Virus record (IMG/VR): IMGVR_UViG_3300046507_000773 | Span: 162,811-226,810 of that record | Reading direction: 5' to 3' (one strand) | Length of the DNA stretch: 64,000 nt | Part shown: positions 1-11,226 of the stretch, one piece after another | Layout of the letters: every line of letters begins with the position of its first letter | How positions within the stretch are numbered: position 1 is the stretch's first letter | The notes under the pieces: model-generated | The model's input: the letters and a program-made list of their open reading frames with translations, nothing else | Told to the model about the DNA's origin: nothing | Databases searched by the model: none | Position numbers and translations under genes: made by a program

Positions 1-1
1 G

Positions 2-574
2 TTCAACGCATGGAACATCCTGACCAACGGCCGCTTCGCCATCAACTGGGAAAAAGCGCAGTACAACGGCCAGATCTGCACCGACGAGAACAACCGCATC
101 CACCTGGGTTACTACCTGGACGCGGAAGGCAACCGTCGCGACCTGCGCGAAATCGACTACCTGGCTGTGCTGAACCGTTTCGGCGGCGGCACCGACCACG
201 ACATCGTCAAGCGCTGGTCCGACTCGTTCATCGACGGTACCGATCCGCTGCTGAAGCGTCTGGAAAACCGCAAGAAGATCATCGACATGATGACGCAGAA
301 CACCGCGGTGTACACGGGCTTCGCTCGTCGCATCTCCTTCGCGCACGTCCTGATGCAAGTCGGCGCCAAGTCGGCCAAGGAAGCCGGCCTGGACTTCCGT
401 ACCATCTCGAGCCACGCTCAGCTGAAGACCAACGAACGCGCCTCCGGCAACTTCGACAACCTGATGATGTCGGGCAGCCAGAGCTCGGGCCTGTTCGGCC
501 GCACCTCGTTCGGTCAAGCGTCGAACAACTTCGGCTCGAACCGTTCGTTCGGCTTCTCGCGCAGCAGCTTCTAA
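2..574 (+). CDS. chmA: Chimallin / phage nuclear shell protein (PhuN, phiKZ gp54-like), 3' part only
   Basis: Frame 2 is open from the window start (FNAWNILTNGRF...NRIHLGYYLDAEGNRRDLREIDYLAVLNRF..., ends GFSRSSF). The RIHLGYY/RDxRxIDYLAxLN motif is recalled from chimallins. Strong high-expression codon bias; lies directly upstream of the nvRNAP beta'-N gene, as in phiKZ. Confidence 0.88.
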   Translation, partial: FNAWNILTNGRFAINWEKAQYNGQICTDENNRIHLGYYLDAEGNRRDLREIDYLAVLNRFGGGTDHDIVKRWSDSFIDGTDPLLKRLENRKKIIDMMTQNTAVYTGFARRISFAHVLMQVGAKSAKEAGLDFRTISSHAQLKTNERASGNFDNLMMSGSQSSGLFGRTSFGQASNNFGSNRSFGFSRSSF

Positions 575-3313: not shown

Positions 3314-3865
3314 ATGGCAGTTGACATCAAAAAGATCTTCGCCGACATCGAGCGCGCCACCGAAACCGAGACCCGCCGCATCTCGGAAGCTGCGTTCAAG
3401 ACCATCTTTTTGCCGATGTTCCAGAACCAGGACAGCAATCCGCACGGCATGGTCCTGATGAAATGGGCGCAATACGTGGGCAGCATCTTCCACAAGGCCT
3501 ACGTGGTCGACGAAAAGAACAACATCCTGTTCACGGTGCCGCCGGTCGTCAAACGCGACGCCATCGCTGAACTGGGCCGGACCGACGGTGACGGTCGTCC
3601 GCTGCAAAACGTGGCGCACATGATCAATACCTACAACCAGATGACCAACATCGGGCCGATTCCTGCGGAAAATTATCTCAATGAACAATTAACCAGGCGC
3701 CTTTCTATTATGAAAGGCGACCAGAACTATCTGGACGACCTCACGGCCTGGAACGAAATCTTCAAACGCTACGGCGTGGCGCCGATCAAAGAGGTCGACG
3801 GCGTGACCACCAAAACCGACACGAAAGGTATCGCATCGCAACATGACGAAATCGAGCCGCTCTAA
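3314..3865 (+). CDS. Conserved hypothetical protein
   Basis: SD AAGGA, 183 aa, phage-like codon usage. Confidence 0.6.
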   Translation: MAVDIKKIFADIERATETETRRISEAAFKTIFLPMFQNQDSNPHGMVLMKWAQYVGSIFHKAYVVDEKNNILFTVPPVVKRDAIAELGRTDGDGRPLQNVAHMINTYNQMTNIGPIPAENYLNEQLTRRLSIMKGDQNYLDDLTAWNEIFKRYGVAPIKEVDGVTTKTDTKGIASQHDEIEPL

Positions 3866-4970
3866 AGTAAAGGGCGCATCGTTAAGTGATCTACACCTGT
3901 TACATCGACGTACTCCTACGTCACTCCTGATTAAGAATCTGTACACGTCCTTACCCGACAATCAGGAGACTGCCGACTTGGATATCATCTTCTTAGCCGG
4001 AGATGTGTTCGATGATCTGGCAACATTAGCAAACGAGAATCTGTGGGAAGTGAAGATCTGGATTGCGAACCTTCTGAGGATGTGCAAGAAACATGGCATC
4101 ATCTTGCGCGTCTTAGAAGGAACGCCCAGCCATGATTGGAAACAATCCTGGCTCTTCCCACTGATTAACGAGATAGCAGGCATTGGCGCCGACATCAAAC
4201 ACGTGAAAGAACTCTCCATCGAGTACATAGAGCCCATCGGTATATCCGTGCTCTATGTGCCCGATGAGTGGGGTCCTACCGACAAAACCTTAAGCCAAGT
4301 ACAAGAACTGCTGCAAGCCAAAGGGCTTGATAAGGTAGATCTTGCTATCATGCATGGACAGTTCGCACATCAGTTACCATCCCATGTGACGGCTCCCAAG
4401 CACGACGCTTCCGCGTATTTGGAACTGGTTCGCTTCTTTATCTTCATTGGCCATGTGCACACCTACAGCCGCTATGACCGCATCATCGCGCAAGGTAGTC
4501 ACGACCGTAACGGTCATGGGGAAGAGGAAGCTAAGGGACACGTGAGGTTTGAGATTGATCTGGAAAGCGGAGAACACACCGTCCAGTTCGTCGAGAACAA
4601 GGGTGCTCAGCGTTACCTGACTATTCAGTGTAACGGGCTCGACTTAGAAGAAACGCTTAACGAAATCGGACGACAGATCAAGGACCTGCCTGACTTGTCG
4701 TTTGTGCGCATCGAAGCTGATTATACCAACCCCATCCTGGCTAACTTGGATGCCGTGGCTCGCCGCTGGCCCATGCTAACCTGGTCAAAACTGGTACGAA
4801 AGGAAGAGAAGGAAGAAAAAGAAGAGTTAGAGAACGAAGAAGTACATTACACCCCGCTTACCATTACCCGCGAAAACGTTAGCGGGCTTCTCATGGACCG
4901 ACTTGTACGAGCCGGTTTGCAAGGTAGCCAACTTGGTACGGCTGATCGACTCTTAGGAGGGTTGCTATGA
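3843..4970 (+). CDS. sbcD: SbcD/Mre11-like metallophosphoesterase nuclease (phiKZ gp65-like)
   Basis: Calcineurin-like motifs SDLH, AGDVFD, GTPSHD, MHG, GHVH. Confidence 0.85.
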   Translation: MTKSSRSKVKGASLSDLHLLHRRTPTSLLIKNLYTSLPDNQETADLDIIFLAGDVFDDLATLANENLWEVKIWIANLLRMCKKHGIILRVLEGTPSHDWKQSWLFPLINEIAGIGADIKHVKELSIEYIEPIGISVLYVPDEWGPTDKTLSQVQELLQAKGLDKVDLAIMHGQFAHQLPSHVTAPKHDASAYLELVRFFIFIGHVHTYSRYDRIIAQGSHDRNGHGEEEAKGHVRFEIDLESGEHTVQFVENKGAQRYLTIQCNGLDLEETLNEIGRQIKDLPDLSFVRIEADYTNPILANLDAVARRWPMLTWSKLVRKEEKEEKEELENEEVHYTPLTITRENVSGLLMDRLVRAGLQGSQLGTADRLLGGLL

Positions 4971-5830
4971 ATCCGTATTTTGAAGGCATTGCGGCGCGTG
5001 CCGTTGGGGAATACGTTCCCATTTCGGTCGCGACCGCCATTGCAATTGAGAATGCTTGCGGTATCAATCCTGAGACCCGCTTGAAAAAGAACCCCATCGA
5101 AGGTGTTGATCAGTTCCACGTCAACATCCGAACTCTCTTCCGTAACTTCATGGGCGCTTTGGATACGGCAACGCTACGTGGCGTGCCGCCCGTATTCATC
5201 GCACCTGTACTAATAGAAGAGATGGACTATATCGAAAGCATCATTCGAGACTATTCCAATGGGGGCGCTAAGGTCGTCTTTTACTTCAGCAACTATAAGA
5301 ACCTGGAGTGGAAGTATCCGAAGGCTGTGATTCGCCGCGACAACACCGACAAGCAGAAAAGCTATCGGGCGACGATGAACGATACCATGGCTACCCTTTT
5401 CGACACCGTGCCTGAAAGGATTAAAGGCTATGATTTAAAGCTTGGCGATAAAGACACGCACTTGGCTCGAGCATTGATGTTGACGAATTACGCATACGAC
5501 TTGCTGTCGCATCGCGAGTTCCGAGACTTAAAGCTTATCGAATCCCACACGGGAGCGGTGAAAGAGCGAGCGCAGTGGTACACCAAGTACCACAACGGGA
5601 AGGACTTAGCGATGATTCCTTTCCGTGAGGATCTTATTCAAGTGTTTGGGGACTCCGAGACATTCGTGCCAATGGACATTAAGCTCCGTAAGCTCATCAT
5701 TGGGCTGGCCGAAAAGAATCGTTGGGGACCCTTGACGACGATGAGTAAGATCAGTGACAACTTGAAGCAGCTTGAGCAAACCAATGGCTTCGCTGCGGCA
5801 ATTGTCAAGAGCCTTTTAGTTGGACCCTAG
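4967..5830 (+). CDS. Conserved protein (gp66-like), possible 5'-3' nuclease/PIN-like fold
   Basis: ATGA overlap with sbcD; motifs VNIRTLFRN and LIESHTG; function inferred. Confidence 0.55.
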   Translation: MNPYFEGIAARAVGEYVPISVATAIAIENACGINPETRLKKNPIEGVDQFHVNIRTLFRNFMGALDTATLRGVPPVFIAPVLIEEMDYIESIIRDYSNGGAKVVFYFSNYKNLEWKYPKAVIRRDNTDKQKSYRATMNDTMATLFDTVPERIKGYDLKLGDKDTHLARALMLTNYAYDLLSHREFRDLKLIESHTGAVKERAQWYTKYHNGKDLAMIPFREDLIQVFGDSETFVPMDIKLRKLIIGLAEKNRWGPLTTMSKISDNLKQLEQTNGFAAAIVKSLLVGP

Positions 5831-5925
5831 CAGCATCGGCCAGGTTAATTTTTACTGAATCTTGGTAAAATAAACGGGCCGCTTTAATACAATGAGCCTA
5901 GTAATCTTACAACACGAGGACTAAC

Positions 5926-6693
5926 ATGAGTGACAACAATAACGGTGGTGGCAACGGTTTCGGCGCTCCGCCGCGCGTCAAGAACGCATTCGACATCACC
6001 AAGCTGAAGCTTACCGCCAAGGGTGCCGATGGCCAGAGCAAAGCCACGATCCAGCTGACCCTGCACCAGAACATGCCGCGCTTCGTCGTCTGGACCGGCA
6101 ACGCCGCCGAACGCGAAGACCGCAACAAAGGCTACGGCAAGATCATCGCCGCTCTGGACCCGGTCGTCCTCGCCGGTTTCTGGGGCATCCTGGACGAAGT
6201 GATCGACCATCAAGGCAAGACCAAGATGGCTGTGCAGAACAAGGGCCACAAGTTCTTCGGCGGCCAGCGCTCCGAGCGTCCGGAAGTGCTGAACACCCTG
6301 ATCGTCGGCAAAGACGAAGACGGCGTCATCTGGATGATGGTTTCCGAAAAGGGCCGCGACCAGATCCGCTTCGAGTTCCGCTTCCCGGAATACCACGTCA
6401 TGATGAATGGCGACGGCACCCCGGTCGACAGCGCAACCGAATGCCGCATGGTGGCCAAGGGCTACCGTGAACTCATGAGCCGCCTGATGGTGACCATGAT
6501 GGCCGACAACTACGTCGAACCGCCTCCGTTCGAGAAGAAGGGTGGCGGCGGTGGCAACCGTGGTAACTGGAACGGTGGCAACCGCGGCGGCAATGGCGGT
6601 AACGGTGGTGGCAACCGCGGCAACTACGGCGGCGGTAACGGCGGTGGCAATTCCGGCGGTGGCGGTGGCATGGACGACGACATCCCGTTCTAA
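5926..6693 (+). CDS. chmC: ChmC/Imp6-like nucleic-acid-binding nucleus protein (phiKZ gp67-like) with Gly/Asn/Arg tail ending DDDIPF
   Basis: Position immediately before the gp68-like gene; folded core flanked by G/N-rich disordered tails; strong codon bias; SD GAGGA. Confidence 0.72.
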   Translation: MSDNNNGGGNGFGAPPRVKNAFDITKLKLTAKGADGQSKATIQLTLHQNMPRFVVWTGNAAEREDRNKGYGKIIAALDPVVLAGFWGILDEVIDHQGKTKMAVQNKGHKFFGGQRSERPEVLNTLIVGKDEDGVIWMMVSEKGRDQIRFEFRFPEYHVMMNGDGTPVDSATECRMVAKGYRELMSRLMVTMMADNYVEPPPFEKKGGGGGNRGNWNGGNRGGNGGNGGGNRGNYGGGNGGGNSGGGGGMDDDIPF

Positions 6694-6716
6694 GCCTTCA
6701 CCTTCTAAGTAAAGTA

Positions 6717-6754
6717 AGCCCAACTGTCCTTTGCGGGGCGGTTGGGCTTTTTTT
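6717..6754 (+). terminator. Intrinsic terminator
   Basis: AAGCCCAACTGTCC-TTTGCG-GGGCGGTTGGGCTT plus T tract. Confidence 0.85.
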
Positions 6755-6786
6755 GGTAGTACAATTCAAGTACGGGATGAAAAACA

Positions 6787-6803: not shown

Positions 6804-6846
6804 GTATTTGAATTGTAAGCCAGATTCATTTATAAGGAGAAGAAGC

Positions 6847-8388
6847 TTGAAGCTTGCAGAGCCGGATGATCTCCTAAGTGAGAAGTCCACCGTGATCCTG
6901 TCGCACGGTAACGAACAAATCAGCTGGAACATTTCCATGCTGGCTCGCACGCGGAATGAAGAGAACCTCGACCGTTTCAAGGAATTAAACGGATACTGGG
7001 CTCGCCTGCCGGAAAAACGTCAGGACGAGATCTTCAAGGTGTACACCGATATCAAGGACGTACTCCATTCCTCGAGCGATCAAAACGCGGTAGCCTTGCG
7101 ACTGCAGCCGCTAGTTGCAAAGCTGTTTAAGCTTAACCCGATGGACGAGATGGCAACGTATCTCGCCATCTACGAGGATCTCAAGATCCCCTCGAATATC
7201 CACGAACACTACGACAGTAGCGGGGATTCGAGAAATAGCGAACAAGGTACTTACGTTACTAAGCAGTACCGTGACCTTGTTACCATGTCGGTAACGCTGC
7301 GCATCATGGTCCCAGTCTGGGGCGACTACATCGCAATTACTGAGCGTCTCGCGGGGACGACGTTCAAGGAATTCATCGCGATGCAGCTGTTGGCGCATGC
7401 GGCTATCTACAATTCGGACACGATGAACCGGCTGCGCGAATACATCCAAGCGCGTCTGCCACCGGAAACTCCGAAAGAAGTTATCTTCCAGGGCATCAGC
7501 TCGGAAGACTTCCCGGATTGGATTCTGGCCCGAATCCTCACACGTCGTCTGGTTGTTGCCGACTTGCGCGGTAACGACGTGAAGAAGTCCTTGATGCCTT
7601 TCCTGCATAGCTTCATCGAAGGCATGGTGAACCCGAAGCGTAACAACTTCACCAGCATGATCAAGGAAAAGACCTTGGAAGCCGGCGGGTCCACGGAAGA
7701 CAGCAACCTCTCCATCTTGGAGGGTTACCGTCCCCGAGCCGAGCTTACCGCAGGCAACATCGCGCACATGGCAACTTACACCCGCAATGCAGAGCGGATG
7801 GCCAAGCGCATCTGTCCCGATCTTCCCGAGGAATTACTGGCATACAGTCTGCGCTCTTCAAAAGCGCTGTTGACGCAGATGATCATGCCAGTCCAACTCT
7901 CGCTTGCATCGTGGATACTTCGTCCGGTTCTTCCGGTACGCGCCTTGCCGTACTTCCGTAAAGTCGACGTGGTTCGCTGCATCGCTGTAGCTCAAGCGCT
8001 GCTGTGGCACCGTGGGCATTACGAACTGGCAGGTCTGGTGAGTGGTGTCGCCCAGCAAAACCAAGGCGTACATCATCAACGCTCAACAGGCTCTCGTGGT
8101 CGCATCCCGACGGAACTGATCGACGAGATCCACCGGCTTTATCCGTACTCGGAAAAGCCAACAGGCAAAATCCGGGAAGGCCAGGATACCCGTGAACTCA
8201 ACATGGTAGTACAATCAATCAAGGAGATCGACGGCCTCTTTACGAAATTCGAGTGGACTCTCACCCTGCCGCCAGAGTGGGTCGAGAAGCTCACCAAAAA
8301 CAAGAACAACCGCAACTATTCCGTACCCCACGAAATGCGGGTCAGGTTAGCAAGCCTGATCGCTGCAATAGCAAAAAGGAGCTTTTAA
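6847..8388 (+). CDS. Non-virion RNAP fifth (promoter-specificity) subunit, phiKZ gp68-like; TTG start
   Basis: About 510 aa; synteny between ChmC and PicA; AAGGAG 7 nt before in-frame TTG 6847. Confidence 0.75.
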   Translation: MKLAEPDDLLSEKSTVILSHGNEQISWNISMLARTRNEENLDRFKELNGYWARLPEKRQDEIFKVYTDIKDVLHSSSDQNAVALRLQPLVAKLFKLNPMDEMATYLAIYEDLKIPSNIHEHYDSSGDSRNSEQGTYVTKQYRDLVTMSVTLRIMVPVWGDYIAITERLAGTTFKEFIAMQLLAHAAIYNSDTMNRLREYIQARLPPETPKEVIFQGISSEDFPDWILARILTRRLVVADLRGNDVKKSLMPFLHSFIEGMVNPKRNNFTSMIKEKTLEAGGSTEDSNLSILEGYRPRAELTAGNIAHMATYTRNAERMAKRICPDLPEELLAYSLRSSKALLTQMIMPVQLSLASWILRPVLPVRALPYFRKVDVVRCIAVAQALLWHRGHYELAGLVSGVAQQNQGVHHQRSTGSRGRIPTELIDEIHRLYPYSEKPTGKIREGQDTRELNMVVQSIKEIDGLFTKFEWTLTLPPEWVEKLTKNKNNRNYSVPHEMRVRLASLIAAIAKRSF

Positions 8389-9873
8389 ATGTTTCAAGCA
8401 TCGAACATCCGCGTCGCCCGTTTCCTGATTTACGAAACCCTCGGCTACGACAACATGTACCGCCGCGCATACAAGACCACGGCTGATGGCGTTGCCTTCG
8501 ATACCCTGGCTGAGCGCATCTCGGCCCATGACCGTATTACGACCGACACTGTCGTCGGCCTGACCAACGGCTTCCTGGCACCGGACATCAATACCGAATC
8601 GCCCAATCCGATCTTCATCCCGGACGGCTGGGGCGCCAAGCGTTGCCGCTTCTTGCTGGAACTGGAATACGACTTCGGCGGCCTCGGCTCGAAGATCCGT
8701 GAAGCCTTCATGGGCTGGACCGATCACTACGGTTTGTCGCTGCAAAGCCAAGCGATCGACCGCGACATGGTGTTCCACCTGAACTCGGTGTCGCACATGA
8801 AGATCCAGGAAATCCCGACGCTCAACGGCATCGAGAAGCACTACAGCGTCCTGGACACGTCGCACATCCTCGCAGCCCAGCAACATCACGGCCAAAGCGG
8901 CGCCTTCAATAACGAGAAGCTGTTCCGCATGCGTCCGGACGATCTGTTCGCCACGATGCAGCTGTCGCACCTGGACACTGGCGGCACCTACGACGACCGT
9001 ACCCGGATCGGCACTGGCGCCCAAAAGGCATCGCGCTCGTCGAACATCACGACGAACTACATGACGAAGATCCTGGACTCGTACCTGACGGCCGCCCGCA
9101 CCCAGGGTGACCTCGGCCAAGACGCCCCGGACATCCTGGAATCGGCACGCAACCGTTCGTACCAGACCAGCTCGGCTTCGTCCGATCCATTCCTGCGCGA
9201 GATCTCCCGCCTGGAAAACGGTGGCAACTACATCCAGGACCACTTCACGTACGCGACGCTCTTGTCGATCGATCCGAACGCTGACAACATGGCCGAAGTG
9301 CAGGTGCTGCCGACCATGATGCGTGACAGCTGGGCAGGCAACACCTCGGAAGAAACCTGGGGTGGCCGCGACATCTACGCACAGTTCGCCACCATCCTGG
9401 CCCAGTCGGTCCCGTCGATCCTGATGGAAACCGGCCTGCAAGCGGTGAAGTTCCAGTCGACGAATCGCAAGATCGGCATGCAGATCGAAACCACCATCCA
9501 GGGCATCAAGTCCTTCAGCGAAGTGTTCTCCCTGGCGCAACAGGGCAACACTTTCATCGAGCGGGTCAACCGCGAGATCATGCTGGACCTGTCCTTCAAC
9601 GGACAGATGGACTACGGCCTCATCATGGAAATGTCGATCCACGGTGAATGCATCGTCGAGCTTTCGCTGAATGGCGACAACAACCTGCACCGGTTCGTTG
9701 CTCCGCTGTTTGCCGATGCGTTCTTCAGCCCGATCGTCACCAGCGATCAACAGCGCAGCCACATGAACGCGGAACACTTCGGTCAATTGGCCGGACGTCT
9801 CGCAGAAGTCAATCTCCTGGGCAGCGCTACGAGCACCAACATCCAGGTCGGCGCCGGCGGCATGGCGTTCTAA
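8389..9873 (+). CDS. picA: PicA/Imp1 phage-nucleus protein import factor (phiKZ gp69-like)
   Basis: 494 aa, abuts the gp68-like stop codon; conserved-looking motifs YRRAY, IPDGW...RFLL, GWTD, RPDDLF; synteny. Confidence 0.72.
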   Translation: MFQASNIRVARFLIYETLGYDNMYRRAYKTTADGVAFDTLAERISAHDRITTDTVVGLTNGFLAPDINTESPNPIFIPDGWGAKRCRFLLELEYDFGGLGSKIREAFMGWTDHYGLSLQSQAIDRDMVFHLNSVSHMKIQEIPTLNGIEKHYSVLDTSHILAAQQHHGQSGAFNNEKLFRMRPDDLFATMQLSHLDTGGTYDDRTRIGTGAQKASRSSNITTNYMTKILDSYLTAARTQGDLGQDAPDILESARNRSYQTSSASSDPFLREISRLENGGNYIQDHFTYATLLSIDPNADNMAEVQVLPTMMRDSWAGNTSEETWGGRDIYAQFATILAQSVPSILMETGLQAVKFQSTNRKIGMQIETTIQGIKSFSEVFSLAQQGNTFIERVNREIMLDLSFNGQMDYGLIMEMSIHGECIVELSLNGDNNLHRFVAPLFADAFFSPIVTSDQQRSHMNAEHFGQLAGRLAEVNLLGSATSTNIQVGAGGMAF

Positions 9874-9881
9874 ATAACAAA

Positions 9882-9903
9882 GGGGGTAGCCGCAACTACC
9901 CCC
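9882..9903 (+). other. GC-rich intergenic hairpin without U tract (mRNA stability or processing element)
   Basis: GGGGGTAG-CCGCAA-CTACCCCC directly before the SD of the next gene. Confidence 0.45.
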
Positions 9904-9918
9904 AACAAGGAGTAATGC

Positions 9919-11226
9919 ATGAAGTTGCTTGAACTGTACAACACCATAGCCGACACGGCTAACTGGGTGGTGTCTCCGGAAGGATTCATCTCCCAGAAAA
10001 CCATCGGCTCCAATAAGGTCGAACCGCTGCTCGTCAAGAAGCTGCGTCTCGCCATGCCGACCGATGAAATCCTTAAGAGCCGCGAGATGCGCGATGTGAT
10101 GGTCTTCCATCCGCTCAAGGAAGACGTGCTGAAGCCCGAGACCGACGTGTTGGACGCATTGCGTACTTCGCTGAACTCGCGCCTGAACGTTACGACCTGC
10201 TGGGTGGCTCTGTCGCTGCTCATCATCGCAGGTTCTTCGGAAGATCATGCCAAGCTCGATCCGGACCAGAGCGAATTCCTGTCGCATGTGAAAGCTGCGA
10301 ACCAGGATTGCGTGGACGACCTGAAGCGCATCTTCGATTCCATGAAGCTCAACGCCAAGGACAAGACCGCGGTGAAGATCTTCACGAAGAAGGGCGGCAG
10401 CATGGGCGGCCAGAAGTACACCTGCCTCGGTGTGGTCAAGTTCCCGCTGTACCAGGAACTGCTCGATTCCGTCGAGAACACCCCGAAGTCCGGCAAGCCT
10501 GAAGTCTTCGGCATCAAGCTCTCGAGCAAGAAAAGCCGGGATGCCCTGATCGCCCTGTTCCGCTACATCTTCCCGAAGATCGACACGCCGGAAGTGTACC
10601 AGTACGGCAGCAGCAGCCTCGTGGCAGCTTTCCTCGATGCGCTGCTGCAAACCACCGCGAAGATCGCGGCACCGATCAATACCGTGATCGACACCTTCTC
10701 GACGATCTTCACCGATCCCGATGAGATGCGCATTCCGGGCGATTGGCTGCCAGTCTTCATGGACCTGGGCACGATGGTCAACGAGATCCGCATGGTCCCG
10801 CAGCAAACGGCCAATGCCCTCGAAATGCCGGACGACGTGAAAGCCAAGCATGCGGTGGACGGCACCAAAGCAGCACCGGCAACGCAGGCCCCGAGCTCGG
10901 GCGCCTACGTGACGCCAGTGGCTGACACGGGACCGGCCAAGACCGAGCGTGGTCTGGACTTCGCCAAACTCGTCAAGGGTGGCGCACAGCCCCAGAAACC
11001 GGCGTTCGGCTTCGGCCAACCGCAACAACAAAGCCAGTTCGGCGGCAACAACACTCACCCGGCGTTTGCAGCGCTGCGTGGTGGTCAGACGCAGAACGCC
11101 AACAATCCGTTCGCACAGTTCCAAACCGGAAATGCGCAAGCTGGTCGTTCGGGCTTCGGCTTTGGTGGTAGCGGCGGCAACAGTGGCGGCGGCTTCGGCT
11201 TCGGCGGAAGTGGTCGCGGCTTCTAA
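9919..11226 (+). CDS. Conserved nucleus-block protein (gp70-like) with FG-rich disordered C-terminus
   Basis: 435 aa, SD AAGGAG; tail AFGFG...QFGG...GFGFGG...GFGFGG...GF. Confidence 0.7.
   Translation: MKLLELYNTIADTANWVVSPEGFISQKTIGSNKVEPLLVKKLRLAMPTDEILKSREMRDVMVFHPLKEDVLKPETDVLDALRTSLNSRLNVTTCWVALSLLIIAGSSEDHAKLDPDQSEFLSHVKAANQDCVDDLKRIFDSMKLNAKDKTAVKIFTKKGGSMGGQKYTCLGVVKFPLYQELLDSVENTPKSGKPEVFGIKLSSKKSRDALIALFRYIFPKIDTPEVYQYGSSSLVAAFLDALLQTTAKIAAPINTVIDTFSTIFTDPDEMRIPGDWLPVFMDLGTMVNEIRMVPQQTANALEMPDDVKAKHAVDGTKAAPATQAPSSGAYVTPVADTGPAKTERGLDFAKLVKGGAQPQKPAFGFGQPQQQSQFGGNNTHPAFAALRGGQTQNANNPFAQFQTGNAQAGRSGFGFGGSGGNSGGGFGFGGSGRGF

What the first reader, a model, noticed from the sequence alone, without database searches (positions are those of the whole stretch)
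6535..6693. ChmC-like protein ends with a bacterial SSB-type linker and acidic tip (MDDDIPF)
Seen: G/N/R-rich repeats (GGNRG, RGG) then MDDDIPF. Known: DDDIPF is the proteobacterial SSB C-terminal motif that recruits partners such as ExoI, RecQ, PriA, RNase HI and Pol III chi; ChmC is described as a condensate-forming RNA-binding protein. Inference: it may mimic SSB to recruit or sequester host SSB partners, or act as the phage SSB.
Basis: partly seen in the sequence, partly recalled or inferred. Interest (0 to 1): 0.62.

Follow-up and report, generated by a model that had tools for sequence, protein, structure and literature searches.

The report
SSB-like tail on phage ChmC protein
A jumbo "nucleus-forming" phage's abundant RNA/DNA-binding protein ChmC ends in the same floppy linker and MDDDIPF tip that bacterial SSB uses to dock partner enzymes, and this tip is kept across over a thousand relatives, so ChmC probably recruits enzymes the way SSB does.

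Summary
Window 5926-6693 (+) encodes a 255-aa protein. Residues 204-255 (nt 6535-6693) are a Gly/Asn-rich, Arg-dotted low-complexity linker ending in MDDDIPF-stop.

The protein is the ChmC orthologue (phiKZ gp67 / PhiPA3 gp61) of an uncultivated rhizosphere chimallivirus. Homology, conserved gene order (ChmA, nvRNAP subunits, gp65, gp66, ChmC, gp68, PicA) and a confident Whirly/PUR fold support this. It is not an OB fold.

The new point is that the tip is a family-wide motif. A search using only the core domain found 1,346 cluster representatives. Of the best 150, 125 end in acid-(x)-hydrophobic-Pro-hydrophobic, with Pro at -2 in 130 and Phe at -1 in 105. Seventeen end in exactly DDDIPF. One double-Whirly lineage matches the last 23 residues of E. 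coli SSB at 70% identity.

The three published model ChmCs (phiKZ, PhiPA3, Goslar) have degenerate tips. That may explain why the tail was described only as an "S/D/E-rich electronegative cluster".

No recognised SSB family is found in the 227-kb genome record.

Best reading: a Whirly-fold analogue of SSB (tetramer core, disordered linker, docking tip). Whether its partners are phage or host proteins is untested. The gene is an ordinary family member, but the SSB-type reading of its tail was not found in the searched literature and is directly testable.

The parts
5916..5920 (+). Shine-Dalgarno-like GAGGA, 5 nt upstream of the ATG
   Evidence: Read directly from the sequence.
5926..6693 (+). 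chmC gene: 255 aa plus stop; orthologue of phiKZ gp67 / PhiPA3 gp61 / Goslar gp176
   Evidence: ORF. phrog_3284 E 1.2e-43. tblastn to PHIKZ067 at E 2e-6, PhiPA3 061 at 1e-4 and FLC9 at 4e-26. Synteny with phiKZ gp65-gp71. GC3 is 0.81 against a genome mean of 0.61.
5974..6525 (+). Whirly/PUR-like nucleic-acid-binding core (residues ~17-200)
   Evidence: AF2 model built on a 68-sequence alignment, with pLDDT above 90 over this span. VIA-align matches: StWhy2 Z 8.7, PBF-2 Z 8.7, MRP1/2 Z 6.8, Pur-alpha Z 6.1. Foldseek's top hits are the same families. No OB-fold match.
6535..6669 (+). Disordered Gly/Asn-rich linker with Arg and aromatic 'stickers' (K204-G248); equivalent in position to the SSB intrinsically disordered linker
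   Evidence: pLDDT below 50 for residues 214-251. Composition. DNA tandem repeats. Length and sequence vary among homologues.
6670..6690 (+). C-terminal tip MDDDIPF (M249-F255); last six residues identical to the SSB-Ct hexapeptide
   Evidence: Sequence. E. coli SSB tail for comparison. Family-wide conservation of 1.8-3.3 bits per position at -6..-1.
6716..6759 (+). Intrinsic-terminator-like hairpin (15 pairs) followed by a T run, 23 nt after the stop
   Evidence: Serratia phage Moabite has an annotated terminator in the same position after its chmC.
1..517 (+). Context: 3' part of the chimallin (ChmA, phiKZ gp54) homologue, which begins upstream of the window
   Evidence: tblastn of phiKZ gp54 against the genome record, E 9.5e-23, ending at window 517.
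3843..4970 (+). Context: SbcD-like nuclease (phiKZ gp65 homologue)
   Evidence: phrog_100 E 1.5e-46. tblastn gp65 E 3.7e-69.
4967..5830 (+). Context: phiKZ gp66 homologue, function unknown
   Evidence: phrog_3229 E 6e-75. tblastn gp66 E 2e-33.
6808..8388 (+). Context: phiKZ gp68 / PhiPA3 gp62 homologue (non-virion RNA polymerase subunit according to PMC11077065). The true start may lie downstream of 6808.
   Evidence: phrog_3209 E 1e-103. tblastn gp68 E 7.6e-44, aligned from window 6886. Naming.
8389..9873 (+). Context: phiKZ gp69 homologue (PicA/Imp1 nuclear import factor according to PMC13648698)
   Evidence: phrog_3141 E 8e-72. tblastn gp69 E 2.6e-28. Naming.

Best explanation
The gene encodes the ChmC of a nucleus-forming jumbo phage (chimallivirus). 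ChmC is built like a bacterial SSB around a different core. It has a Whirly-fold single-strand-binding domain (a homotetramer in PhiPA3). This is followed by a ~45-residue Gly/Asn-rich disordered linker that drives condensate formation, and an 8-residue acidic tip ending in Ile-Pro-Phe-COOH. I propose that the tip works as SSB-Ct does. In that model it is a short docking peptide whose terminal aromatic residue and carboxylate insert into a basic-rimmed hydrophobic pocket on partner enzymes, so that four tips per tetramer concentrate those enzymes on ChmC-coated single strands (phage mRNA, R-loops, ssDNA). When unbound, the tip would fold back on ChmC's own basic nucleic-acid surface, as SSB, T7 gp2.5 and T4 gp32 tails do. 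I judge the most likely partners to be phage-encoded nucleic-acid enzymes at or in the phage nucleus. Examples are the RNase H-clamp/DNA polymerase complex, UvsX and nvRNAP-associated factors. Some of these descend from bacterial SSB partners. Host SSB partners are the main alternative. Shown here: gene identity, fold, tail anatomy, family-wide purifying selection on the tip, and absence of any recognised SSB family in the genome record. Inferred: docking function, partner identity and autoregulation.
For: Identity and context: plus PhuZ, major head and tail sheath hits. Fold is Whirly/PUR and not OB. The tip equals SSB-Ct.

Conservation in a sample chosen without reference to the tail: a core-only profile (A2) searched against 1.84 billion representatives gave 1,346 hits. 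Among the top 150, 125 end in acid-(x)-hydrophobic-Pro-hydrophobic. Pro at -2 occurs in 130, Asp at -4 in 113 and Phe at -1 in 105. Information content is 1.8-3.3 bits at positions -6..-1 against 1.1 bits or less at -10..-7. Only seven core positions reach 90% conservation. Canonical tips occur throughout the core-domain tree.

Cultured phages on Burkholderia, Ralstonia, Serratia, Klebsiella, Erwinia and Salmonella keep the motif. One lineage (P0164) matches the last 23 residues of E. coli SSB at 70% identity, pairwise E 3e-7. This suggests that SSB and ChmC tails are interchangeable modules.

No PF00436, gp32, DUF669 or Enc34-type SSB is found in the genome record. ChmC is the only ORF in the genome with such a tip. 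Its codon bias groups it with the major head, PhuZ and tail sheath genes, as expected for a protein needed in stoichiometric amounts.

Literature: PhiPA3 ChmC is a tetramer that binds ssRNA (58 nM) and ssDNA (184 nM). It was found by proximity labelling with UvsX. Its tail is needed for condensates, shell localisation and productive infection (PMC11077065). GFP-Rhc (RNase H-clamp, a DNA polymerase subunit) pulls down ChmC (PMC13648698). An Rhc homologue is present in this genome. E. coli SSB also phase-separates through its linker, helped by contacts between its C-terminal peptide and its core, and enriches its partners (PMC7584906).
Against: No binding has been shown. The single complex prediction gave no verdict and counts neither way. 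The experimentally studied ChmCs have degenerate tips: phiKZ FDEDMPSF, PhiPA3 FDDEIPNF, Goslar VAFDGLAF, 201phi2-1 ELASFDW. A canonical tip is therefore not indispensable for the family. Published tail deletions removed linker and tip together, so no phenotype can be assigned to the tip. Goslar ChmC lacking the tail still supports growth of the phage nucleus, which argues against a tip-dependent role in bulk replication. The PhiPA3 pull-down lists ChmB, RNA polymerase subunits and ribosomal proteins, not replication or repair enzymes. The co-purification with Rhc may be bridged by nucleic acid. The genome record is only about 86% complete, so absence of a classical SSB is not proven.
Confidence: 0.45

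Rival explanations
1. Host mimicry. Abundant early ChmC displays four SSB-Ct copies per tetramer in the cytoplasm. It competes with host SSB for host partners (ExoI, RecQ, RecJ, PriA, Pol III chi, DnaG, RNase HI, UDG and others). The effect would be either to disable host replication, repair and nuclease activities or to borrow a host enzyme.
For: Most lineages keep exactly the bacterial consensus over very deep divergence. This is easiest to explain if the constraining pocket is an invariant external one. Extended matches such as DFDDDIPF occur, and P0164 matches E. coli SSB over 23 residues. ChmC is early, abundant and partly cytoplasmic in PhiPA3. A precedent has been proposed for prophage DUF669 SSBs carrying DDDIPF (PMC13687109).
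Against: Phages of Pseudomonas and E. coli have non-canonical tips: a one-residue insertion before the terminal Phe, or loss of Pro. The host SSB hexapeptide is described as highly conserved (PMC5872125). About 30% of ChmC tips end in Trp, Met, Tyr or Leu, and a coherent ...DDFPM subclade exists. No host SSB partner is named in the PhiPA3 ChmC pull-down. Much of ChmC acts at or in a compartment that excludes most host proteins.
Confidence: 0.25
2. ChmC is the phage's replicative/recombination SSB. It would coat ssDNA at forks inside the phage nucleus and use the tip to organise the phage replisome and recombinase. mRNA binding would be a second role.
For: No recognised SSB family is found in this genome record, and SSB is not mentioned in a recent review of nucleus-forming phages. 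The protein has an SSB-like architecture. PhiPA3 ChmC binds ssDNA at 184 nM. It shows UvsX proximity and Rhc/DNA polymerase co-purification. Nuclei are smaller with less DNA on knock-down. The gene is adjacent to an SbcD-like nuclease gene.
Against: PhiPA3 ChmC prefers RNA in vitro, and eCLIP shows binding to phage mRNAs with an mRNA-export defect on knock-down. Tail-less ChmC still supports nucleus growth in Goslar. The gene lies in the nvRNAP/ChmA block rather than with replication genes. An unrecognised SSB could exist among the many proteins of unknown function.
Confidence: 0.15
3. Autoregulation only (an extension of the published view). The acidic end is an 'electronegative cluster' that folds back on the basic RNA-binding face. 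It would tune affinity and specificity and promote inter-tetramer contacts for condensates, with no external partner.
For: This was proposed in PMC11077065. SSB's C-terminal peptide contacts its own core and enhances phase separation (PMC7584906). From established knowledge, the terminal Phe of T7 gp2.5 occupies its own DNA-binding cleft. The tail is required for ChmC condensates.
Against: Electrostatics alone does not explain near-invariant Pro at -2 and a hydrophobic residue exactly at the C-terminus in 125-130 of 150 divergent clusters. Nor does it explain convergence on, or capture of, the specific bacterial motif. In every precedent the same tail also docks partner proteins.
Confidence: 0.1
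4. The tip is a localisation signal. It would dock ChmC on a shell component (ChmA groove, ChmB or PicA) for retention at the nuclear periphery, or for import or export.
For: PhiPA3 ChmC without its tail loses shell localisation, and ChmB co-purifies with ChmC. picA lies two genes downstream of chmC in this window and in phiKZ.
Against: Goslar ChmC without its tail still forms puncta at the nuclear perimeter. Nothing links shell proteins to an SSB-type pocket. This reading does not explain identity with the bacterial motif.
Confidence: 0.05

Closest known systems
ChmC of Chimalliviridae (PhiPA3 gp61, phiKZ gp67, Goslar gp176; Enustun et al. 2024, PMC11077065)
   Same: It is homologous in sequence and sits in the same position in the conserved ChmA/nvRNAP gene block. 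It has the same Whirly-type fold, and the same N/G-rich disordered tail followed by an acidic end.
   Different: The window protein carries the canonical ...MDDDIPF end. The three studied proteins have degenerate ends (FDDEIPNF, FDEDMPSF, VAFDGLAF). The paper treats the end as an S/D/E-rich electronegative cluster and never mentions SSB (0 occurrences). Core identity to phiKZ gp67 is only ~24%.
Bacterial SSB (E. coli SSB; Pfam PF00436) C-terminal region: disordered linker plus SSB-Ct
   Same: Both have a Gly-rich low-complexity linker of 45-60 residues with condensate-forming propensity. The terminal hexapeptide DDDIPF is identical. Both have a tetrameric single-strand-binding core and are very abundant.
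   Different: The core is Whirly/PUR, not OB, and there is no sequence homology in the core. The linker is N/G/R-rich rather than G/Q/P-rich. The characterised family member prefers RNA. Partner binding through the tip is unproven.
Phage SSBs with acidic C-terminal tails: T7 gp2.5 and T4 gp32 (from established knowledge); prophage DUF669 SSBs carrying DDDIPF (PMC13687109)
   Same: These are phage-encoded, abundant single-strand binders. Their acidic tail with a terminal aromatic residue both autoregulates binding and docks replication/recombination proteins. DUF669 proteins show that a non-PF00436 phage protein can carry the bacterial DDDIPF motif.
   Different: They have different folds (OB or gp2.5-like) and were not detected in this genome. 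The gp2.5 and gp32 tails do not copy the bacterial motif.
Whirly/PUR-fold proteins (plant Why1/2 and PBF-2 p24, T. brucei MRP1/2, Pur-alpha)
   Same: They are the best structural matches (Z 6.1-8.7 over 120-140 residues). They form tetramers and bind ssDNA/ssRNA.
   Different: There is no detectable sequence similarity (no Pfam hit at E <= 0.1). ChmC repeats are beta-beta-beta-alpha according to PMC11077065. No SSB-Ct-like tail was found described for these families in the papers read here.

Membership tests
ChmC (chimallivirus nucleus-associated RNA-binding protein) | Sequence homology to phiKZ gp67 / PhiPA3 gp61 | tested here: met
   phrog_3284 E 1.2e-43 over residues 15-255. tblastn to PHIKZ067 at E 2e-6, PhiPA3 061 at 1e-4 and 201phi2-1 gp123 at 3e-7. 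The core profile also finds Goslar gp176 at E 1e-40.
ChmC (chimallivirus nucleus-associated RNA-binding protein) | Position in the conserved block with chmA and nvRNAP subunits, in a genome with phage-nucleus hallmarks | tested here: met
   Homologues of gp50, gp54 (ChmA), gp55, gp65, gp66, gp67, gp68, gp69 (PicA), gp70 and gp71 lie in the same order as in phiKZ. PhuZ tubulin is present, as is the RNase H-clamp homologue.
ChmC (chimallivirus nucleus-associated RNA-binding protein) | Whirly/PUR-like fold followed by a disordered N/G-rich C-terminal region | tested here: met
   AF2 mean pLDDT is 83, with the core above 90 and residues 214-251 below 50. StWhy2 and PBF-2 match at Z 8.7. The tail is 49% Gly and 18% Asn.
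ChmC (chimallivirus nucleus-associated RNA-binding protein) | Homotetramer, RNA binding, RNA-dependent condensates | not testable with these tools
   Known only for PhiPA3 and Goslar proteins (PMC11077065).
Bacterial-type SSB (PF00436) | OB-fold ssDNA-binding domain | tested here: not met
   No Pfam hit at E <= 0.1 and no PDB sequence hit. The structural matches are Whirly/PUR proteins, with no OB fold among the listed matches. It is therefore not a member of the SSB family.
Bacterial-type SSB (PF00436) | Disordered linker followed by the conserved C-terminal peptide ...DDD[IL]PF | tested here: met
   The tail ends MDDDIPF, against E. coli NEPPMDFDDDIPF. The motif is conserved across the ChmC family.
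Bacterial-type SSB (PF00436) | Tip-dependent binding of partner proteins | tested here: inconclusive
   The only attempt (tail residues 216-255 with the phage RNase H-clamp homologue) returned 'no answer'. This needs experiment.
Bacterial-type SSB (PF00436) | Preferential, cooperative ssDNA binding and a role at replication forks | not testable with these tools
   Literature covers PhiPA3 ChmC only: ssDNA Kd 184 nM against ssRNA 58 nM.
Plant/organellar Whirly and PUR families (Pfam Whirly, PurA) | Match to the family sequence profile | tested here: not met
   No Pfam family at E <= 0.1. The resemblance is structural only.

The most novel reading that the evidence does not exclude
ChmC is the SSB-equivalent of nucleus-forming phages, which have no identified SSB. 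A Whirly-fold tetramer would have taken over the SSB role and kept, or in at least one lineage captured from an enterobacterial-type ssb gene, the SSB linker-plus-tip module. It would use that module to plug into SSB-interactome-type pockets of phage and/or host enzymes. One abundant protein would then coordinate replication/recombination, R-loop removal by the RNase H-clamp subunit and mRNA handling inside the phage nucleus.
Probability: 0.3. Interest if true: 0.8.

Novelty: new member of a known kind. Interest (0 to 1): 0.6.

Why it matters
ChmC is essential for chimallivirus infection, but the role of its tail has been read only as condensate formation. Recognising the last 6-8 residues as a strongly conserved SSB-Ct-type docking motif has three consequences.

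- It separates the tail into two testable modules, linker and tip.
- It gives a concrete way to find ChmC's partners, using peptide pull-downs with or without the terminal Phe.
- It offers a candidate for the unidentified single-strand-binding hub of the phage nucleus.

It also suggests choosing a different experimental model. The three studied phages carry degenerate tips. PCH45, PhiEaH1, RP12 and FLC9 carry canonical or near-canonical ones. If host SSB partners are the target, this would be a widespread host-takeover mechanism based on motif mimicry.

Tried and rejected
- **Complex prediction.** I tested ChmC tail residues 216-255 against the phage RNase H-clamp homologue P0255. The result was 'no answer' with score 0.01.
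- **First word search.** The search returned 204 homologues that nearly all had DDIPF-like ends. I rejected it as evidence of conservation. A word search restricted to residues 1-200 found only 14, so most candidates had been pulled in by tail words. I replaced it with a core-only profile search of all representatives. This was the one use of the costly search, justified because the conservation claim depended on a tail-independent sample.
- **The search for related loci.** Running it with the core alignment failed because no stretch was conserved enough.
- **Sequence searches.** Pfam and PDB gave nothing. PF27154, precomputed for P0038, is not in the Pfam copy held here.
- **OB-fold hypothesis.** Rejected on the structural matches.
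- **Tree building.** The maximum-likelihood run with the default method did not finish in 300 s. I used FastTree instead. Many deep branches are unsupported, so I use the tree only to show that canonical tips are scattered throughout.
- **Expression data.** Only rhizosphere DNA metagenomes hold the sequence and there are no RNA runs.
- **Supplementary tables.** The interactome tables of the ChmC and Rhc papers are not held.
- **DNA comparison of the P0164 tail with E. coli ssb.** It shows a 17-nt identical run and about 80% identity over the last 36 nt. That is too short to decide between gene capture and convergence.
- **Host of the phage.** Not determined. The best cultured relative of ChmC is Burkholderia phage FLC9 at 34.5%.
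Full report
**1. What is in the sequence**

Window 5926-6693 (+) is an ORF of 255 codons. A GAGGA ribosome-binding site lies 5 nt upstream of the ATG. A 15-pair hairpin with a T run follows 23 nt after the stop.

Residues 201-255 are 49% Gly, 18% Asn and 5% Arg, with GGNRG three times, and end GGGGGMDDDIPF. The linker DNA is itself a degenerate tandem repeat, with 57-nt and 36-nt periods. E. coli K-12 SSB, read from its genome record, ends NEPPMDFDDDIPF.

Among 1,270 ORFs of the whole 226,810-bp genome record, this is the only one with such an end.

**2. What the gene is**

The window is the last 64 kb of an IMG/VR virus record, estimated ~86% complete. The sequence is held only by rhizosphere metagenomes.

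The protein matches PHROG 3284 (E 1e-43) and no Pfam family. tblastn finds it in 100 jumbo-phage records. These include PHIKZ067, PhiPA3 061 and 201phi2-1 gp123 ('glycine rich protein'). The best match is Burkholderia phage FLC9 at 34.5%.

PhiPA3 gp61, phiKZ gp67 and Goslar gp176 are ChmC, the nucleus-associated RNA-binding protein of Chimalliviridae (PMC11077065).

Gene order is the same as in phiKZ: gp50 (DNAP-C), gp54 (ChmA, cut by the window start), gp55, gp65 (SbcD-like), gp66, gp67 (ChmC), gp68 (nvRNAP subunit), gp69 (PicA), gp70, gp71. The genome also encodes PhuZ, a phiKZ-type major head protein and a tail sheath. It has an RNase H-clamp (Rhc) homologue as well. This is the ChmC orthologue of an uncultivated chimallivirus.

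**3. Fold**

An AlphaFold2 model built on 68 homologues has pLDDT above 90 for residues ~17-200 and below 50 for residues 214-251. An exhaustive structural comparison puts four Whirly/PUR proteins on top:
- potato Why2, Z 8.7
- PBF-2 p24, Z 8.7
- T. brucei MRP1/2, Z 6.8
- Pur-alpha, Z 6.1

The next row scores 5.1. Foldseek ranks the same families first. The protein is not a member of the SSB family.

**4. Is the tip conserved?**

A first word-based search returned 204 homologues with strikingly uniform ...DDIPF ends. That sample is biased, because the search picks candidates by shared 5-residue words. Words taken only from residues 1-200 retrieve just 14 proteins.

I therefore built a core-only alignment (62 sequences cut at the end of the last helix). 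I searched it as a profile against 1.84 billion cluster representatives. This gave 1,346 hits at E <= 1e-3 and 506 at E <= 1e-30.

In the best 150, all chosen without reference to their tails:
- 78 end [DE][DE][ILMVF]P[FWY].
- A further 47 end acid-(x)-hydrophobic-Pro-hydrophobic.
- Pro is at -2 in 130, Asp at -4 in 113, Asp/Glu at -5 in 126 and Phe at -1 in 105.
- 17 end in exactly DDDIPF, and four in DFDDDIPF, the last eight residues of E. coli SSB.
- Information content is 1.8-3.3 bits at positions -6 to -1 and at most 1.1 bits at -10 to -7.

In the core only seven columns reach 90% conservation. The tip is thus among the best-conserved parts of a protein whose linker is hypervariable in length and sequence. 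This is the signature of a short linear motif under purifying selection.

On a core-domain tree the canonical tips are spread everywhere (FastTree, many deep nodes unsupported).

**5. Why this was probably missed**

The experimentally studied ChmCs are exceptions:

| Phage | C-terminal end |
|---|---|
| phiKZ | FDEDMPSF |
| PhiPA3 | FDDEIPNF |
| 201phi2-1 | ELASFDW |
| Goslar | VAFDGLAF |

phiKZ and PhiPA3 have one residue inserted before the terminal Phe.

Other cultured phages keep the motif:

| Phage | C-terminal end |
|---|---|
| FLC9 | SEDLPF |
| RP12 | SDDIPW |
| Moabite | FDNDIPW |
| FBKp24 | DFDNDVPW |
| PCH45 | YDEDIPF |
| PhiEaH1 | DFDSDIPF |
| SPLA10 | FDDTLPF |

The ChmC paper describes the end as a ~15-residue S/D/E-rich 'electronegative cluster' and contains no mention of SSB. 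No paper in the searchable library combines ChmC with SSB, or SSB C-terminus with jumbo phage. The closest published statement concerns prophage DUF669 SSBs that carry DDDIPF (PMC13687109).

**6. Extra similarity to SSB**

A tandem 'double-Whirly' form exists. Examples are Erwinia phage pEa_SNUABM_54 (470 aa, ending ...APPAFDTDIPF) and the metagenomic P0129, P0164, P0188 and P0228.

The last 23 residues of P0164, QQSQPASQPAVQPPMDFDDSIPF, are 70% identical to those of E. coli SSB, QQSAPAA-PSNEPPMDFDDDIPF (pairwise E 3e-7). At DNA level there is a 17-nt identical run. Whether this reflects capture from an ssb gene or convergence, it implies that SSB and ChmC tails are functionally interchangeable modules.

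The architectural parallel is complete. SSB is a tetrameric core plus a compositionally biased linker plus a conserved C-terminal peptide. Its linker drives phase separation, its peptide-core contacts enhance that, and its partners are enriched in the condensates (PMC7584906). ChmC is a tetramer whose tail is required for condensates.

**7. How it most likely works**

*Shown:* the tip is a selected motif with the SSB-Ct consensus, at the free C-terminus of a disordered linker on a multimeric single-strand binder.

*Inferred:* it docks into partner pockets as SSB-Ct does, and competes with nucleic acid for ChmC's own basic face.

*Partner identity is open.* In favour of phage-encoded partners:
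- ChmC acts at or in the phage nucleus.
- It was found by proximity labelling with UvsX.
- It co-purifies with Rhc, a type-1 RNase H fused to a clamp-derived domain that is a DNA polymerase subunit and is proposed to remove R-loops.
- Tips vary by lineage: terminal Trp/Met/Tyr/Leu in ~30%, a coherent ...DDFPM subclade, and the phiKZ insertion. Host SSB tips do not vary in this way.

From established knowledge, E. coli RNase HI is itself an SSB-Ct client. I list that as a lead and have not tested it.

In favour of host partners:
- The exact bacterial consensus is retained over very deep divergence.
- P0164 matches E. coli SSB over 23 residues.
- ChmC is expressed early and abundantly and is partly cytoplasmic.

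For a role as the phage SSB:
- No PF00436, gp32, DUF669 or Enc34-type SSB is in the genome record.
- PhiPA3 ChmC binds ssDNA at 184 nM.
- Knock-down gives smaller nuclei with less DNA.

Against that role:
- PhiPA3 ChmC prefers RNA and has eCLIP signal on mRNAs.
- Tail-less ChmC still supports nucleus growth in Goslar, although it does not rescue titre.

All published tail deletions removed linker and tip together, so the tip has never been tested on its own.

**8. Verdict**

The window's protein is an ordinary member of a known family, hence 'new member of a known kind'. What is new is the finding that the family carries a conserved SSB-Ct-type tip, together with the SSB-analogue reading of ChmC. 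I did not find this in the searched literature. It is directly testable with peptide binding, tip-only mutants and tip-dependent interactomes.

Confidence that the tip is a selected functional motif is high, about 0.9. Confidence in the committed best explanation, SSB-Ct-like partner docking with phage-encoded partners favoured, is 0.45. Host mimicry gets 0.25, a role as the replicative SSB 0.15, autoregulation only 0.1 and shell docking 0.05. Docking of some kind underlies the first three. Nothing in this work required a referred step.

Noticed in passing
window 5926-6693; genome record G000:C1 46297-48474, 132380-134470, 150529-151536: chmC has GC3 of 0.81 against a genome mean of 0.61 (sd 0.07), ranking 4th of ~214 ORFs. 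The other top genes are the major head protein (0.86), PhuZ tubulin (0.86) and tail sheath (0.80). This is a codon-bias class of presumably highly expressed genes, and it hints at a GC-rich host. It also explains the local GC jump (0.62 against 0.49) at the gene.
   Followed up: partly
P0164, P0188, P0129, P0228, P0187; L015:67-1479 (Erwinia phage pEa_SNUABM_54): A tandem-duplicated 'double-Whirly' ChmC (404-470 aa) exists. Its tails are Q/P-rich like enterobacterial SSB. The last 23 residues of P0164 are 70% identical to E. coli SSB, which may mean capture of an ssb 3' end.
   Followed up: partly
P0126, P0156, P0163, P0168, P0189, P0203, P0235, P0247, P0248: A coherent subclade ends ...[DE]DDFPM instead of ...DDIPF. 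Phe at -3 is coupled with Met at -1. This looks like a co-varying variant of the motif and could mark a changed partner pocket.
   Followed up: no
L001, L004, L002, L020 (phiKZ, PhiPA3, 201phi2-1, Goslar chmC): All experimentally studied ChmCs have non-canonical tips (MPSF, IPNF, SFDW, GLAF). Cultured phages with canonical or near-canonical tips (PCH45, PhiEaH1, RP12, FLC9, Moabite) would be better models for testing the tip.
   Followed up: yes
window 5884-6723 (-) and 8347-11139 (-): There are long antisense ORFs of 279 aa and 930 aa opposite chmC and the gp69-gp70 region. They have repetitive Ala/Val/Gly/Arg-rich translations and lie opposite genes with clear homologues. They look like shadow frames of GC3-rich coding sequence rather than genes.
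   Followed up: no
window 1-517 and 663-1907: The window opens inside the chimallin (ChmA, phiKZ gp54) homologue, followed by a gp55 homologue. chmC therefore lies ~5.4 kb downstream of chmA, as in phiKZ.
   Followed up: partly
method note: For proteins with low-complexity tails, the word-indexed homologue search selects candidates through the tail words. This inflates apparent tail conservation: 204 hits with the tail against 14 with core words only.
   Followed up: yes
G000:C1:94581-96065 (+), outside the window: This is the RNase H-clamp (Rhc) homologue, 494 aa, with RNase_H PF00075 at E 8e-23 in residues 81-188. It is a candidate client of the ChmC tip by analogy with E. coli RNase HI and SSB.
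   Followed up: partly
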